This document shows, in pieces, positions 15,119-21,100 of a DNA stretch of 64,000 bases. The position numbers and the translations under genes were made by a program. Origin of the DNA: Bugula neritina. Lineage: Eukaryota; Animalia; Bryozoa. The DNA is taken from contig OZ037770.1 of assembly GCA_964035545.1 (NCBI GenBank), forward strand, positions 8,004,973 through 8,068,972, read 5' to 3'. The notes under the pieces are model-generated. The model made no database searches, was not told the DNA's origin, and worked only from the letters and a program-made list of their open reading frames with translations. Numbering within the stretch: position 1 is the first letter of the stretch; the number at the start of each line of letters is the position of its first letter.

Positions 15119-18100
15119 CTACACTTTATCAGAATGTTGGTTGTTCTCATCATTTTCATACAGGTGAGTAGAGGTTCCCTCTCCCTGTCCGTCTTTGGCA
15201 GAGGTCAAGGTGATTTCATCTGGACCTTCGTACTCAAAGGCTTGGTCCATGGTTCTGAACTCACCAACTACTGGTTGCTTGTCCACAGGAAGTGACTGCT
15301 TGAGGTCTAAGGGAGGGTCAGCACGGAAAGGCTGCTCGTACTCGGCTAGCAAGTCCACAAGATCTGGTCCCATGTACTCCGCAGGCAAACTCGTTGGTCC
15401 TCCATCCAGAGAGTTGGAGTCCATAAGCTGGTCATCATACTCAGGTTCATTCTCTGGTGCCGGTGAGCTGTTAGCAGTGAGCCTTTCATGCTGGTGTTGA
15501 GGAGTGGAACCATGTGGTTTCTCATAAACCAAAGAAGGAATGATGTCAGGTATCTCTTCATACAAGTGATCAGCTACAGTGGAAAACCCATTATCCATCA
15601 CTTCCTTTACACAGTCATGGATGTATCTGTACTGCTCCTGTATTTGTTAATTACAACAAACCAAGTTACACATAGTATAGTGACTGCTAAAAACTAGAAT
15701 TTTACATTTTATGTAACATTTATCATGTAATAATCATAAGTTAGAGATCATAGGGAATCTGAAAGTTCCCTTGGTGAGTGCTGCATATATGATATTGATA
15801 AGATTACTTAAACTGAATTGAAAAAGCTAACGTTTGGCAGCAGATTATCATATCTTGCAGCTATAAAAAAGATTTTGAAGATGAAGTTCAAAATCTAAAA
15901 ATAGAAAAATATAAACAATCAATTCTCTTTACATAATAACAAGTTTCAAGAAATATCTCAAGATTTGAGAAAGTTTCAACAAAAGCTCATACATTCTAAA
16001 TTGATTTAAACTCATTAAATGGTCAAAATATAACTTGGTTTATTTTTTTCAGGAAGATTACCATGAATATACAAACAAACACATGATGAGTTTTTGTCTT
16101 GAGAGCTACTCTTAACGGTCATGTTTGAGTCATTTTAACTAGCGGTAGATCTTCTCAACACGATATTCAAACGTGTCTCGATTTTCACTTATAAAACTAT
16201 AGTCCAGTTGTGTGTTGATGATAAACCATATATCTCACCTCTGTCTGAACCATTCTACACCTGTACTCTCTCATCTCCATCACGACGTTGAATATGTTTA
16301 TCTCATCATGATCTTGAATACGTTGAAGAAGTCTATCAACAGCTATGTACAAGCCAGTACGACCAACACCAGCACTGTCAAACATTGTATACACCAGATC
16401 AATAGAGAACTGTCTAGAAGCATTTAAACATCTGCAGTGTAAAAGTATAACAGATAAAGTGTTACCTGCAGTGTAAAAGTGTAACAGATAATGTTACCTG
16501 CAGTGTAAAAGTGTAACAGATAATGTTACCTGCAGTGTATAAGTATAACAGATAAAATGTTACCTGCAGTGTATAAGTATAACAGATAATGTTACCTGCA
16601 GTATAAAAGTATAACAGATAATGTTACCTGCAGTGTACAAGTACAGCAGATAAAGTGTTACCTGCAGTGTACGAGGAGAGGGGAAGAACTTCCATCTAAC
16701 ATTTGACTTCTCACTGCCATCACAAACTCTAGCAAAGCCTGTGGTTGTGATGGACATTCAAAGCTGGGCCAGAATGTTGAAGAAATGTGTTTGATAGTCC
16801 GTATTGTTTCACCCTGGGAGTACAAAAACTGCAGACATCACGTCACATAAGGACCAATAAACTTGTTCCATCATTTATATGTAGCTTCACAGCATTTGAT
16901 AATAAGTGCTAGCCAGCAACTTATAGCACTGGATTTTAGCTCGATAAACATGCTCGATTCTATATTATACATATAGACCAAACACCGTTGCGTTTGGGTT
17001 ATAGCTTAAAATAATACTACCTATGTTATGATGTATATAAACATATCTTTATAAAAACTGCAAAAGTCAAATGCAGATAATATGTATGTCAGAGTAAGAG
17101 AACTTACCATTTGAATATCAAATATTCTGATGGTATATTTTGGAAGAACATATTCAGCTCTCTTAGTTACAACTAAGTCACCATATGCTGCAGGTTCCTC
17201 TACTGTGTCTGGCCAGTACTGTTCACACTGCTTTCTTCCTGAAACATAAACAATTGTTAGCAATTTACCTCTCGCTATAAGTTAACATACTTACATCTCT
17301 CCATAATTCAATATACTTACCTCTCTCTATAAGTTAATATACTTACCTCTCTCTATAAGTTAATATACTTACCTCTCTCTATAAGTTAGCATGCTTACCC
17401 TCTCTCTATAAGTTAATATACTTACCTCTCTCTATAAGTTAACATACTTACCTCTCTCTATAAGGTAATATACTTACCTCTCTCTATAAGTTAACATACT
17501 TACCTCTCTCTATAAGTTGAGTCAACATCACTATCATAGTAACATTCTGTTCCCAAATCATTCTCCAGAAATGGTCAATAGTTCCTGGTAGGGGTCCCTG
17601 AGCAGCAATGTATGTTTCTGTTGAGGCTTTACTCTATCATAAATATAAATAACTGCAGATTCTCAATATTCTGGGATTAGGATTAAGGGGCCTGTGTATA
17701 AAGTGCACAATTGAATAAGTAGAATAATAAAAACTTTTATACCTGTATGATGTACAGATAATTACTAATTACGTAAGTATTATAATTCTATGTTAACAAC
17801 TTAATTAAGAATTATTTGAAATTCAGAATTACATGCAAGGCTATTAAACATGCAAAAATCAGAGGAAACTCATAATTTCTCACAGGAATGAAGTTAGCAT
17901 TGATGTAGTCTCCCTCTCCCTTATTAGATGTTAGTTTTACTCTGGAGTGATCAACTAGAAACATTAGCAAATGCAGTGAGTAACTACTACTAGTGGTGGT
18001 ACACTTATAATTCCTGCTATATAGAAATTATCATGTAACATTAACATGCAAATTTGTGGTATATAAATTGTACTGGGGCTTATCTTTGATATTTTCATGT

Positions 18101-21100
18101 ATATAAAAAGTGAACTATGAAACTATGTTGGTACATCAGAAGCCCTTTACTATTTGTACAAATTCTCTTCTCCAAATGTCTTAGCATGTAGTAACAAGTA
18201 TACCATATCTAACTTTATTAATATCATTCACTTGAAAGAACACACCTGATTGGTTACCCTACAGACTAATCAGTTATATGGTGCACTTGGACATTTAATA
18301 AAACATCATTTTATTCTGCACATGAAACACTTTTCCTTAATTTTTACTCAGTGAAACTTAATTGCAAAACTTTATCTCTGTTTCCAGAGACCAAGCCTAC
18401 GCAACAGTAAATGGGTCATTTTACTTAATTTAGTACACACTGGAATTCTCCAGTTTTTAGCTATTTGTTACAATTTAGCTGCTAATGAACATGTGTTTTT
18501 TCTCAAAACTAGTAAAATATCAATAAATACACCTAAATAATCAAGGTTTTTTTAATTTTGCTTGATTTCCCATGTTTTTTCTTACTTTTTCAGTTACTTT
18601 TGATTGCAGACCGTTACGGTCTTTTTGTAACGGTCCGCAATCAAAATTAGCTAAATAAATAGGAAAAAACGTGGGAAATTAAGCAAAATTAAAAAGAACC
18701 TTGATTATTTAGATGTTATTATTGATATTTTACTAGTTTTGAGCAAAAAGACATGTTCATTAGCAGCTAAATTGTAACAAATAGCTAAAAACTGGAGATT
18801 TCCAGTGTGTACTAAATTAAGTAAAATGACCCAAATACTAGATACTTCTAGTGCAGGCAAACACATCGTTGTTAAAACTGAATATTTCCAGCCTCATACT
18901 GTGCTATATGTAAATAATCGTAAATGTTTGACAAAAGTGTATAATTTAAACAAAAACTCGCTGCTGAAAAACTGCAAAACACACTTTTATATTCTAATTT
19001 CATAGTTTGTGTATTAAACTCAAAACAAGTGCGTTTATTTATAGAGTATTTTCAAGTTATTTTGAAAACTAGCCTTGCTGTAAACTTGTGCTCTTACATC
19101 CCTGCACACAGAAAATTCCTACTAATCTCGGCAAAATGACATCTTTTGAATGTTATTAATGACTTACAAGGCAGAATGTACAGAGTTCTGTTCTTCATCT
19201 TATTTTCTGGTAGAGAGCCTACATCACAGCTGTAGTTAGCACATTTCTCATCTATTTCCTGTATAGATATAATAATTCTAACCCGATTAGAACAGCACAG
19301 GAGTATATATTTTCGGAATGCTGATAAACATAACACTATAATACATTATATAAAAGAAAAATTTAAAAAATACATTGCATTACGTAATAATATATTTTAG
19401 CTAAATGAAATAATATAAAGAATACAAATAGACAGCATGAGATATAAGCTTCCTTTTCAGTTTAATAAATTACTTGAAATTCTCTAGAAATCCTTGCGCT
19501 AGTTTCCTCATTAGATTCAAGTCCTTCATGTATTTCTGTCAACTCTGTACTTGTTTTTAGTTGATCAGCTAAATCCTTCTTTTCTTTTCTACAAATAATG
19601 TTGATAATAATATAATCTGCAGAGTGTGTGGGTGGTCATGTGATGTACAGCTGACAGACGATATTGATGAAGAGCTAATAGTAACAGCAACAGCACAGAG
19701 ATATAGACAAGAGACGGTCACATGTATGCAGACATCTGAAAAGATATGAGACAACTTACATAATTTATATTATATTTTGGTTAGAATAGAAAGTGAGATC
19801 TATATATAGCAGCCTAAACTATTGTAAATCAGAAAAAAGTAGAGGTGCAGTTTGAGTATGAAGTAACACACGATCCGAGGAAAATGTGATATACTCTCTG
19901 AAAGCAAAGTGAAAGACAGTGTGAAAAGAATTGAAAAAAGTAAAAAACATCGCATCAATTTGAGCATATATACATAACTTGATTTATTTAATATATAACA
20001 CAATCACTATGTTCCTTTCCATTATGCTAATGGATTTTTTATTTGATATTTGGAAGTGGGTCCATTGAATGAAAAGACATGAGTTAAACCAAACCGAGAC
20101 CACAACTTCATTCTACAACTCTGAACAGACCAAGGGAATGCAGTGAAAAAATGCTTAATTAAAATTATTACAGCCATAAATAACTATATTTAATAATAGC
20201 AGAGTTGTTTAACTTACATTGTTTGCTGTCGACGACGGAAAATACACACCAGCAAAGCGAGTACTACAAGTAGGGTAACAGCAACAACCACCCCTACTAT
20301 TATTGGAGTATAGTTGAGCTTAGTCTTAGTCTCAACCATACAGTCAGAGTCACTGTATCCTGCAGAAGTGAATCCTCTCACGTAGACACTGTAAACATAA
20401 GTACCTATATACTATAATATACGGTGTATATATACTATAGTATACAATGTATACACACTATAATACTACAGTCATAGTCTGTATAATACACAATCGACTC
20501 ACCAATATTGTTGGTTGGACTTGAGTGGACCATTACATAGTCTTGTGTCTCCATCTTTACAACTTGTATCAGTTCCAACATTAATCAGAGTACTGCTTGC
20601 CACAGCCCTACAAAATTACAGACTATCTAGTAACTTACTGCCAGTAACTCACCAACTATCAGTAACTCACTAACTACCAGTAACTCGCTAACTACCAGTA
20701 ACTCGCTAACTATCAGTTACTCATTAACTATCAGTAACTCATTAACTACCAGTAACTCACTAACTATCAGTAACTCAGTACCTATCAGTAACTCATTAAC
20801 TACCAGTAACTCATTAACTACCAGTAACTCATTAACTTGCTAACTCACTAACTATCAGTAACTCAATAACTATCAGTAACTCACTAACTATTAGTAACTC
20901 ACCAACTACCACTAACTCTGTAATGGGAACTCACTAGCTATAAGAAACTTAATAATTATGAGTAACTCTGTAATCGGAAGTCAATGAGTATATGTTTTCA
21001 GTCAAGCTCATGATAGCTTATAATAGGAAATCGACGTACATATGTTTTCAGCTAGGCTCATATGATAGCTTATACTACACACATATCTCAAACTCACTGA

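What the first reader, a model, noticed from the sequence alone, without database searches (positions are those of the whole stretch)
16239..19258. Both paralogs have a rewired PTP active site (KNRY to KNRT, WPD to WPS) with an intact [10 protein letters not shown]
Seen: the pTyr-recognition loop reads KNRTLYILP in both genes (A 19195-19184; B exon 34857-34767). The general-acid loop reads FWPSFE in A (16771-16763) and FWPSSG in B (32526-32518). The catalytic Cys/Arg and Q-loop (MVQT) are retained; B also has QGP to QSP. Known: the WPD Asp is the general acid and its loss gives substrate-trapping mutants; PTPRQ (WPE) prefers phosphoinositides; IA-2 has a degenerate WPD loop and is largely inactive. 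Inference: these are pseudophosphatase or pTyr-trapping receptors, or enzymes with a non-protein substrate. The change predates the duplication and the frames stayed open.
Basis: partly seen in the sequence, partly recalled or inferred. Interest (0 to 1): 0.8.

Follow-up and report, generated by a model that had tools for sequence, protein, structure and literature searches.

The report
Bryozoan receptor phosphatases with disabled active site
Eight neighbouring receptor tyrosine-phosphatase genes of a Bugula-type moss animal have all lost two key active-site residues yet are kept and transcribed, so they most likely act as non-catalytic signalling receptors; this is a new family of a kind that is already known.

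Summary
Genes A and B (minus strand) are two of exactly eight tandem paralogs (A-H, contig C6 8.02-8.35 Mb) of a Bugula-like bryozoan. All eight read KNRT instead of KNR[Y/W/F] and lack the WPD aspartate (WPS in seven, SLS in C). All keep the catalytic Cys.

They are single-domain receptor PTPs (FN3 repeats, TM, one PTP domain, Tyr-rich tail) of the R3/Ptp10D lineage, not D2 domains. About 30 other PTP exons sampled in this genome, and 32 aligned relatives, keep the Asp or a Glu.

The domain is under purifying selection (A vs B dN/dS 0.26). That selection sits on the KNRT exon (pN/pS 0.08). The WPS-loop exon is nearly relaxed (0.68, against 0.11 and 0.22 in two canonical arrays). Copies C, F and G have lost further catalytic residues.

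Spliced contigs from RNA-labelled runs confirm the exon use and read WPSSG. No alternative canonical exon exists in the window.

Best reading (about 0.6): catalytically impaired, D2-like pseudophosphatase receptors kept for binding or scaffolding. A pTyr trap or a lipid phosphatase is less likely.

The parts
19474..19590 (-). Gene A, juxtamembrane exon (E1), ends in ...SREFQ
   Evidence: tblastn with P0102; spliced joint 19257/19473 with GT..AG in runs X1 and X2
19169..19258 (-). Gene A, exon E2: pTyr-recognition loop, [12 protein letters not shown]; KNRT codons at 19195-19184
   Evidence: joints 17954/19168 and 19257/19473; pN/pS 0.08 across the 8 paralogs
17884..17954 (-). Gene A, exon E3: (F)DHSRVKL...DYINANFIP
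   Evidence: Pfam PF00102 positions 14-35; joint 17632/17883
17504..17633 (-). Gene A, exon E4: ...[11 protein letters not shown]...MLTQLIER(G)
   Evidence: genome Pfam hit at C6:8022471-8022602
17108..17238 (-). Gene A, exon E5: (G)[10 protein letters not shown]...FDIQM
   Evidence: joint 16812/17107
16662..16813 (-). Gene A, exon E6: WPD-loop exon reading FWPSFECP (W-P-S at 16771-16763), ending in VHC (HC at 16669-16664) plus 2 bases of the Ser codon
   Evidence: contigs end exactly at 16662 and 16814; pN/pS 0.68
16239..16374 (-). Gene A, exon E7: (S)AGVGRTG P-loop with Arg codon CGT, and Q-loop MVQTE
   Evidence: joint 15636/16238
15119..15637 (-). Gene A, last exon E8: EQYRYIHD (end of the PTP domain) followed by a tail of about 155 aa with seven Tyr in acidic contexts (e.g. 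LYEEI, LYEND), then the stop codon
   Evidence: contigs on 15134-15636
20220..23660 (-). Gene A, FN3, stalk and transmembrane exons (approximate span, introns included)
   Evidence: tblastn with P0102 residues 1-369; PF00041 fn3 recorded on P0102
34768..34857 (-). Gene B, exon E2: same 30 residues as in A; KNRT codons at 34794-34783
33936..34006 (-). Gene B, exon E3
33554..33683 (-). Gene B, exon E4, with QSP in place of QGP and WGQ in place of WEQ
32821..32951 (-). Gene B, exon E5
32417..32568 (-). Gene B, exon E6: FWPSSGCP (W-P-S at 32526-32518) ... ILVHC
31990..32125 (-). Gene B, exon E7: (S)AGVGRTG ... MVQTG
31053..31397 (-). Gene B, last exon: EQYRYIHD plus Tyr-rich tail, 44 aa shorter than in A, then the stop codon

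Best explanation
A and B are two members of an eight-gene tandem family (A-H) found only in the Bugula lineage. They are single-pass receptors with an FN3 ectodomain, one R3/Ptp10D-type PTP domain and a long Tyr-rich tail.

In the common ancestor of the family the PTP pocket lost two things. One is the aromatic residue that stacks on the substrate's phosphotyrosine ring (KNR[Y/W/F] to KNRT). The other is the general-acid Asp of the WPD loop (to Ser). This is the same pair of positions that makes RPTP D2 domains nearly inactive.

I infer that the domain has little or no phosphotyrosine phosphatase activity. I infer that it is kept as a folded, non-catalytic module, meaning a binding surface or regulator centred on the strongly conserved KNRT-loop region. 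I infer that the tail tyrosines, once phosphorylated, dock SH2 proteins, as the C-terminal tyrosine of R3 RPTPs does. The receptor would then act as an adaptor, or as a competitor of its canonical neighbour (gene I), and not as an enzyme.

Shown here: the sequence states, family size, lineage, selection pattern, transcription and splicing. Inferred: loss of activity, the binding role and the SH2 docking.
For: - Motifs and gene models are established.
- There are exactly 8 KNRT exons and 8 WPS-type exons in the 216-Mb genome, all on C6 8.02-8.35 Mb.
- R3 affinity: the best single-domain PDB hit by sequence is PTPRB at 266.7 bits. PTPRO and Ptp10D score 238, PTPRJ 226, PTPRQ 222, and PTPRS D1/D2 202/191.
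- The AF2 model has pLDDT 88, and its top Foldseek hits are VE-PTP, Ptp10D and PTPRO at TM 0.86-0.92.
- The tree places the family inside a Ptp10D-like clade (support 95/93) on a terminal branch of 0.92, against 0.39-0.40 for its sisters.
- The nearest outside relatives are Ptp10D-like proteins of Lingula, Owenia, bivalves and arachnids, with KNR[Y/W/F] and WPD.
- Selection: A vs B dS 0.205, dN 0.054, ratio 0.26, Fisher p 9e-7.
- pN/pS by exon: E2 0.08, E3 0.06, E6 0.68. The same exon gives 0.11 and 0.22 in two canonical WPD arrays of this genome.
- 14 of 72 columns that are invariant or nearly so in canonical PTPs vary among the 8 copies, not significantly fewer than at other columns (OR 0.60, p 0.15).
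- Secondary losses: P-loop Arg to Cys in C and to His in F; Q-loop Gln to Arg in G; W and P lost in C.
- Spliced contigs from RNA-labelled runs lie on exons only, carry GT..AG joints at the predicted junctions and read WPSSG.
- Literature: roles of the KNRY Tyr and the WPD Asp, and the PTPRU D1 pseudophosphatase that binds substrates (PMC7320164); PTPN14 inactive for lack of the Tyr (PMC2638020); LAR D2 activated by two substitutions (PMC2213029); SFK docking on R3 tails (PMC3676743).
Against: - No enzymology exists. Cys, Arg, the Q-loop and the P-loop are intact in A, B, D, E and H, so residual activity on good leaving groups is expected, as with Asp-to-Ala mutants on pNPP.
- Copies A and G carry a Glu two residues after the Ser, which might act as a substitute acid.
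- The overall dN/dS of 0.26 fits an enzyme under moderate constraint as well as it fits a binding module.
- The RNA contigs are only 90-95% identical to gene A, so transcription is shown for the family, not for A or B individually.
- The run labels are 'RNA?' guesses, although spliced joints can only come from RNA.
- Gene conversion among the copies blurs the pairwise dN/dS values, which are not independent of one another.
- The role of the tail is inferred from motif resemblance only.
Confidence: 0.6

Rival explanations
1. The domain is a working enzyme with altered chemistry or substrate. The shallower KNRT pocket would admit a non-aromatic phosphoester (pSer/pThr, a phosphoinositide) or a substrate with a good leaving group. 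Another residue, or the substrate itself, would replace the general acid.
For: - Cys, Arg, the P-loop backbone and both Q-loop Gln are intact in 5 of 8 copies.
- The KNRT exon is under strong purifying selection (pN/pS 0.08), as expected if the recognition loop still selects a ligand.
- A and G have a Glu at +2 of the Ser.
- PTPRQ, an R3 member, prefers phosphoinositides (cited in PMC2638020 and PMC7320164).
Against: - Most copies (WPSSG) have no acidic residue in the loop.
- The loop exon is nearly unconstrained (0.68), and invariant catalytic positions vary within the family.
- Three copies lost the Arg or a Gln.
- Alkyl phosphate esters have worse leaving groups than phenols, so they need the acid more (established enzymology, my inference).
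- PTPRU, PTPN14, PTPN21 and HD-PTP were tested on lipids or pSer/pThr without success (PMC7320164, PMC2638020).
Confidence: 0.18
2. The domain is a natural substrate trap. It would bind phosphotyrosine proteins tightly without releasing them, like engineered Asp-to-Ala mutants.
For: The general acid is lost while Cys, Arg and Gln are retained. PTPRU binds substrates and shields them from related phosphatases (PMC7320164).
Against: - The ring-stacking Tyr, which contributes much of the pTyr affinity and pocket depth, is replaced by Thr in all copies.
- PTPN14 is thought to fail on peptides for exactly this reason (PMC2638020).
- CD45 D2 has reduced affinity for the same reason (PMC2213029).
- An engineered trap keeps this Tyr.
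Confidence: 0.08
3. The array is decaying junk: young duplicates of a dead gene drifting towards pseudogenes, with no function for any copy.
For: - Copy C has lost W, P and the P-loop Arg, and carries a 10-kb insertion between exons E5 and E6.
- F lost the Arg, G lost a Gln, and D has a premature stop in the tail.
- One GenBank model (P0106) is frame-shifted in E6.
- E6 pN/pS is 0.68.
Against: - dN/dS is 0.17-0.54 in all 28 pairs, and A vs B differs from 1 at p 9e-7.
- E2 and E3 have almost no replacement changes despite pS of 0.13-0.18.
- All PTP exons of all 8 copies are free of stops and frameshifts.
- Splice sites are kept and spliced transcripts exist.
- The same motifs are kept in a second Bugula lineage that differs by 7-16% in DNA.
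Confidence: 0.1

Closest known systems
R3-subtype receptor PTPs (Drosophila Ptp10D; vertebrate PTPRB/VE-PTP, PTPRO, PTPRJ, PTPRH)
   Same: - Shared architecture: FN3 ectodomain, one TM helix, a single PTP domain, and a C-terminal tail with a Tyr-x-Asn site.
- Best PDB hits by sequence and by fold.
- Clade membership with Ptp10D-like proteins.
- The unusual G-C-P after the WPx motif is shared with Ptp10D-like relatives and with gene I.
   Different: - Thr in place of the aromatic of KNR[Y/W/F], and Ser in place of the WPD Asp.
- A tail of about 155 aa with seven conserved Tyr instead of a short tail.
- An eightfold tandem expansion.
- A terminal branch about 2.3 times longer than its sisters.
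- Only one WPx-loop exon, where the canonical neighbour has two.
Membrane-distal D2 domains of tandem RPTPs (LAR, RPTP alpha and epsilon)
   Same: The same two positions are substituted (KNRY Tyr and WPD Asp) around an intact HCSAGxGRTG. In LAR D2 two substitutions give a very active enzyme (PMC2213029), and PDB 6d4f is the PTP epsilon D2 V457Y/E597D mutant. So this family works like a D2.
   Different: - It is the only PTP domain and lies next to the membrane, not second in a tandem.
- It scores lower against D2 than against R3 domains (191 vs 267 bits).
- D2 domains usually have Glu at the WPD position, a weak acid; here it is Ser.
PTPRU D1 (a pseudophosphatase receptor)
   Same: A membrane-proximal RPTP domain with a non-canonical pTyr loop and WPD loop but a retained Cys. 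It is inactive, yet binds substrates and protects them from its active paralogs (PMC7320164). This is the best functional analogy for A-H next to canonical gene I.
   Different: - PTPRU is R2B, has a D2, and reads GSRQ and WPE with a Thr in the P-loop.
- Its pTyr loop is disordered.
- In the Bugula family the loop exon is the most conserved part, and the model folds confidently.
PTPRQ (R3, WPE, phosphoinositide phosphatase)
   Same: Same R3 subtype, and the WPD Asp is replaced. PDB 4ikc scores 222 bits.
   Different: PTPRQ keeps an acidic residue (Glu). The Bugula family has Ser and, in most copies, no acid in the loop, and it has also lost the KNRY aromatic.
PTPN14 (Pez/PTPD2) and IA-2/PTPRN
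   Different: They belong to different subfamilies and have different architectures. Each lacks only one of the two features, or has other P-loop changes. None forms a tandem array.

Membership tests
Classical (class I Cys-based) PTP domain, Pfam PF00102 | Profile match over the domain | tested here: met
   Exon pieces of A hit PF00102 above the 20.9-bit cut-off at profile positions 14-35, 80-124, 128-176 and 178-222. PF00102 is recorded on P0102.
Classical (class I Cys-based) PTP domain, Pfam PF00102 | HC(X)5R(S/T) signature with the nucleophilic Cys and the Arg | tested here: met
   VHC|SAGVGRTG in A, B, D, E, G and H. The Arg is replaced in C (Cys) and F (His).
Catalytically competent classical PTP | General-acid Asp in the WPD loop | tested here: not met
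   Ser (AGC) in all eight copies. Asp is present in the 32 other sequences of alignment A1.
Catalytically competent classical PTP | Aromatic residue of KNRY that stacks on phosphotyrosine | tested here: not met
   Thr (ACT) in all eight copies. Relatives have Y, W or F.
Catalytically competent classical PTP | Q-loop (QTxxQ) | tested here: met
   MVQTE|EQY in A; MVQTG|EQY in B; MVRTE in G.
R3-subtype RPTP / Ptp10D lineage | FN3-only ectodomain, one TM helix, one PTP domain | tested here: met
   tblastn with P0102 finds FN3, stalk and TM exons upstream in A and B. fn3 and PTP_tm are recorded on P0102. A stop codon follows the tail and there is no second PTP domain. Upstream of the FN3 exons, A also has a 193-aa ORF of another kind, which I did not analyse.
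R3-subtype RPTP / Ptp10D lineage | PTP domain groups with R3 domains by sequence, fold and tree | tested here: met
   The nearest named relatives are 'tyrosine-protein phosphatase 10D-like'.
R3-subtype RPTP / Ptp10D lineage | C-terminal Tyr that is phosphorylated and docks SFK or Grb2 | not testable with these tools
   A Tyr-Glu-Asn site lies near the C-terminus of A, C and E-H, and a Tyr-Asp-Asn site in B. Phosphorylation and docking are not shown. The precedent is in PMC3676743.
RPTP D2 domain | Second, membrane-distal PTP domain of a tandem pair | tested here: not met
   It is the only PTP domain and follows the TM and juxtamembrane exons directly.
RPTP D2 domain | Closer in sequence to D2 than to D1 or single domains | tested here: not met
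   PTPRS D2 scores 190.7 bits, D1 201.7 and PTPRB 266.7.
Pseudophosphatase | No catalytic activity despite the fold | not testable with these tools
   This is predicted only from the two missing residues, the relaxed constraint on the loop exon and the secondary losses.
PTPRQ-like phosphoinositide phosphatase | WPE loop (Glu as the acid) | tested here: not met
   WPS in seven copies and SLS in C.

The most novel reading that the evidence does not exclude
The KNRT family may be a set of stand-alone 'reader' or decoy receptors. The dead R3 domain would have evolved a new, strongly conserved binding surface around the rewired recognition loop (E2 and E3 pN/pS 0.06-0.08). With it, the receptor would compete with, or shield substrates from, the canonical Ptp10D ortholog lying at the end of the same array. 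The seven-Tyr tail would turn the receptor into a transmembrane SH2 adaptor. That would be a natural, expanded analogue of the PTPRU/PTPRK relationship, in a colonial animal where variable surface receptors might serve self/non-self recognition or settlement signalling.
Probability: 0.2. Interest if true: 0.65.

Novelty: new variant of a known kind. Interest (0 to 1): 0.38.

Why it matters
Dead or nearly dead PTP domains are common. However, almost all studied ones are either D2 domains tied to an active D1, or single human oddities.

Here a D2-like active site (no ring-stacking aromatic, no general acid, intact Cys-Arg) is the only intracellular domain of a receptor. That receptor has been multiplied eightfold. 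It sits beside its canonical relative, with which it still exchanges sequence blocks.

This gives a natural experiment on two questions. The first is what such a domain does on its own. The second is which parts stay constrained once catalysis is given up: the recognition-loop exon is conserved and the WPD-loop exon is relaxed.

For genome annotation, these genes should not be counted as active tyrosine phosphatases.

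Tried and rejected
- **A and B as D1 and D2 of one gene.** Rejected. Each has its own tail exon with a stop codon, and its own TM and FN3 exons.
- **Origin from a D2 domain.** Rejected by bit scores and by the tree.
- **Hidden alternative exons restoring KNR[Y/W/F] or WPD in A or B.** tblastn with gene I's canonical exons and a six-frame motif scan of the window found only the KNRT and WPS exons.
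- **The family outside Bugula.** The exhaustive representative search with the WPS exon gave one cluster at E below 1e-10, which is Bugula neritina. The word-based search with P0102's domain gave only Bugula above 50% identity. Bryozoan proteomes are scarce, so absence elsewhere is weak evidence.
- **WPS in other PTP genes of this genome.** None among 30 sampled WPD-loop exons, and none genome-wide by exon search.
- **Gene-specific expression of A or B.** Not resolved. Only contigs were available, at 90-95% identity.
- **Literature on Bugula PTPs.** Nothing relevant was found.
- **Whether P0102 is an allele of one of A-H.** No. Its contig is only 84-93% identical to the fetched loci, so it is a different lineage or sibling species.
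- The exons of A and B were never joined into a spliced protein for any search, fold or file. Exons were searched by reference one at a time. dN/dS counts were summed exon by exon. The database protein P0102 stood in for the family in the alignment, tree and fold.

Full report
**What is in the sequence**

The window is low-GC animal DNA. It lies at contig C6:8004973-8068972 of a 216-Mb assembly. On the minus strand there are two copies of one gene, 15.6 kb apart. They are 82-92% identical in DNA, introns included, over about 14523-24571 and 30481-40896.

I traced the PTP domain of copy A exon by exon:
- E2, 19258-19169: ...[12 protein letters not shown].
- E3, 17954-17884: FDHSRVKL...NANFIP.
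- E4, 17633-17504: ...AQGPLPGT...LIER.
- E5, 17238-17108: [11 protein letters not shown]...FDIQM.
- E6, 16813-16662: GETIRT...FWPSFECP...LLVHC.
- E7, 16374-16239: SAGVGRTG...MVQTE.
- E8, 15637-15119: EQYRYIHD..., a tail of about 155 aa, then the stop codon.

Copy B has the same layout. Its KNRT is at 34794-34783 and its WPS at 32526-32518 (FWPSSGCP). It reads QSP for QGP, and its tail is 44 aa shorter.

The exon pieces hit Pfam PF00102 above its cut-off.

**What organism and what gene**

An exhaustive search with the WPS exon found a single cluster below E 1e-10 among 1.84 billion representatives. Its members are Bugula neritina proteins.

One of them, P0102 (810 aa), gives the architecture: FN3 repeats, one TM helix, a juxtamembrane segment, one PTP domain with KNRT and WPSSR, and a Tyr-rich tail. 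All splice junctions I had inferred for A and B agree with it.

The GenBank contig carrying P0102 is only 84-93% identical in DNA to any paralog I fetched. The exon searches show that this genome holds no further copies. So the window's genome is a different Bugula lineage or sibling species, and the KNRT/WPS state is shared by both lineages.

**Family size and states**

A Pfam scan of the whole genome showed several tandem PTP arrays. I fetched the array on C6 and aligned it exon by exon. Exon searches of the whole genome then showed exactly eight KNRT exons and eight WPS-type exons, all on C6 8.02-8.35 Mb and all on the minus strand.

- All eight copies read KNRT (codon ACT) and Ser (codon AGC) at the Asp position. 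AGC needs at least two base changes from an Asp codon.
- The loop reads WPSSG in B, D, E, F and H, WPSFE in A, WPSSE in G, and SLSFG in C.
- All eight keep His-Cys.
- Three copies carry further hits on catalytic residues. The P-loop Arg (CGT) has become Cys (TGT) in C and His (CAT) in F, both CpG transitions. The Q-loop Gln has become Arg in G, which also has YWLD for YWPD.
- D has a premature stop in the tail.
- No PTP exon of any copy has a stop or a frameshift.

Thirty WPD-loop exons sampled from other PTP genes of this genome were checked. All read WPD, except for WPE in a LAR-type D2 and in two genes on C3.

**Lineage**

- Against PDB sequences the best single-domain score is PTPRB (266.7 bits). 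Next come PTPRO and Drosophila Ptp10D (238), PTPRJ (226) and PTPRQ (222). PTPRS D1 and D2 score 202 and 191.
- The nearest named proteins outside Bugula are 'tyrosine-protein phosphatase 10D-like' from Lingula, Owenia, bivalves and arachnids. They are 46-50% identical.
- In a 33-sequence alignment, every other sequence has Y, W or F at the KNRY position and Asp in WPD.
- A maximum-likelihood tree puts P0102 inside the Ptp10D-like clade (support 95/93). Its terminal branch is 0.92, against 0.39-0.40 for its sisters.
- An AlphaFold model of P0102:385-665 is confident (pLDDT 88, pTM 0.89). Its best structural matches are VE-PTP, Ptp10D and PTPRO (TM 0.86-0.92, rmsd about 1.6 A).

So the family is a fast-evolving offshoot of the R3/Ptp10D lineage, not a stray D2 domain.

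**The canonical neighbour**

At the far end of the array, on the plus strand (C6 8.421-8.431 Mb), lies gene I.
- Its FN3, stalk and TM exons, and its E4, E5 and E7, are 80-94% identical to A-H, flanking intron included.
- These shared parts form three blocks: 8421020-8423371, 8426612-8427193 and 8429203-8429399.
- Between the blocks gene I is unrelated at DNA level and canonical in sequence. It has a different juxtamembrane exon, KNRW, two successive WPD-loop exons (HWPDYGCP and FWPDFGCP) and a short tail ending near IYENA.
- The WPS exon of A-H is 40-46% identical to the second of the two WPD-loop exons, and shares its G-C-P.

I saw the exons independently but did not test that claim.

My reading is that A-H descend from a gene I-like ancestor. 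They kept one loop exon and still exchange conserved blocks with gene I by gene conversion. The order of these events is inferred.

**Selection**

Nei-Gojobori counts were summed exon by exon.
- For the PTP domain of A vs B: dS 0.205, dN 0.054, ratio 0.26. All 28 pairs fall between 0.17 and 0.54. A vs B differs from neutrality at p 9e-7.
- The constraint is uneven. pN/pS is 0.08 for E2 (the KNRT exon) and 0.06 for E3. It is 0.29, 0.42 and 0.41 for E4, E5 and E7, and 0.68 for E6 (the WPS-loop exon). The tail gives about 0.5.
- As a control, the homologous exon gives 0.11 in a canonical WPD array on C1, at the same synonymous divergence (pS 0.086). It gives 0.22 in an array on C5.
- Of 72 columns that are invariant or nearly so across canonical PTP domains, 14 vary among the eight copies. 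Of the other 182 columns, 52 vary. That is no significant depletion (OR 0.60, p 0.15).

The family therefore keeps the fold and the recognition-loop region, but no longer protects the catalytic machinery.

Caveats: the pairs are not independent, and gene conversion is evident.

**Transcription**

Four runs labelled as RNA were laid on 15100-19600.
- Contigs lie on the predicted exons. The sampled intron bins 15704-16156 and 17667-17817 have no depth, while a repeat in the intron at 18271-18874 is very deeply covered.
- Five joints with GT..AG ends match the predicted junctions: 15636/16238, 16812/17107, 17632/17883, 17954/19168 and 19257/19473.
- The contigs are 90-95% identical to A. At 16761 and 16758 they read the WPSSG form, so they come from paralogs or from another strain.

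Transcription and exon use are therefore shown for the family, not for A or B individually. No alternative canonical exon exists in the window.

**Mechanism**

The Tyr of KNRY sets the depth of the pocket and stacks on the substrate ring. The WPD Asp is the general acid (PMC7320164, PMC2213029).
- Loss of the Tyr is held to explain PTPN14's inactivity on peptides (PMC2638020).
- Asp-to-Glu alone cost PTPRK about 115-fold in turnover (PMC7320164).
- LAR D2 becomes very active after only two substitutions in the surrounding loops (PMC2213029). From memory I take these to be the KNRY Tyr and the WPD Asp positions. The PTP epsilon D2 mutant in PDB 6d4f carries V457Y and E597D.

The Bugula family has both defects, and a Ser that cannot act as an acid. 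I therefore infer little or no phosphotyrosine phosphatase activity. I infer a retained non-catalytic role, with the conserved KNRT-loop region as the likely interaction surface. The seven conserved tail tyrosines are likely SH2 docking sites, by analogy with R3 tails (PMC3676743). Their contexts resemble Src-SH2 and Grb2-SH2 preferences, which I recall from memory.

PTPRU, which binds substrates of its active paralogs without turning them over, is the closest functional analogy (PMC7320164).
- A true pTyr trap is less likely because the stacking residue is gone.
- A PTPRQ-like lipid phosphatase is less likely because there is no acid in most copies and the loop is unconstrained.
- Pure decay is contradicted by the selection and transcription data, although copy C, and perhaps F, G and D, may be on that path.

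**Limits**

There is no enzymology and no per-copy expression. Orthology with the GenBank lineage is unresolved, and other bryozoan genomes were not searched. The exons of A and B were never joined into a spliced protein for any tool; P0102 stood in for the family where a continuous domain was needed.

Noticed in passing
window 16432-16671 and 17265-17518 (B: about 32183-32427 and 32976-33570): Two minisatellites begin exactly at exon-intron borders and include the last bases of the exon plus the GT donor. A 32-34-bp unit repeats 7.3 times after the WPS/HC exon, and a 26-bp unit repeats 9.7 times after the QGP exon. Each therefore forms a row of duplicated splice donors. The arrays are also present in B, H and gene I.
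   Followed up: partly
G000:C6:8421000-8430900 (L027, L019), plus strand: Gene I is a canonical Ptp10D-like gene (KNRW, two successive WPD-loop exons, short tail). It shares three blocks of 83-94% DNA identity with A-H, separated by unrelated segments that hold the active-site loop exons. This looks like a gene-conversion mosaic.
   Followed up: partly
window 18271-18874: A repeat inside the intron between E2 and E3 of gene A is covered at very high depth in all four RNA-labelled runs, with many rearranged joints. It is probably a dispersed, transcribed repeat family.
   Followed up: no
window 26085-26666, minus strand: A 193-aa open frame lies upstream of A's FN3 exons. It is not related to P0102's ectodomain. 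Another note of this scan (s1-453682) calls it beta-propeller-like.
   Followed up: no
window 10288-11557 and 8659-9179: Two long tandem arrays. One has a unit of about 31 bp over 1.27 kb, in a block with GC 0.43 and GC skew +0.35. The other has a unit of about 20 bp over 0.5 kb.
   Followed up: no
window 2838-5413 vs 61436-64000; 11855-12829 vs 53935-52965; 43391-45378 vs 47389-49332: Further duplications within the window: a 94% direct one, an 89% inverted one and a 90% direct one. The last lies in the region upstream of gene B.
   Followed up: no
G000:C6:8087279-8097822 (L020, L002): Paralog C has about 10 kb between exons E5 and E6, where the other copies have about 0.3 kb. It carries the most damage: W, P and the P-loop Arg are all lost.
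   Followed up: partly
G000: C1 3.96-4.23 Mb; C5 0.49-0.53, 1.31-1.51 and 2.13-2.31 Mb; C3 7.6-8.14 Mb: Several other tandem arrays of PTP genes with canonical WPDHGVP loops. This genome has a large expansion of receptor-type PTP genes.
   Followed up: partly
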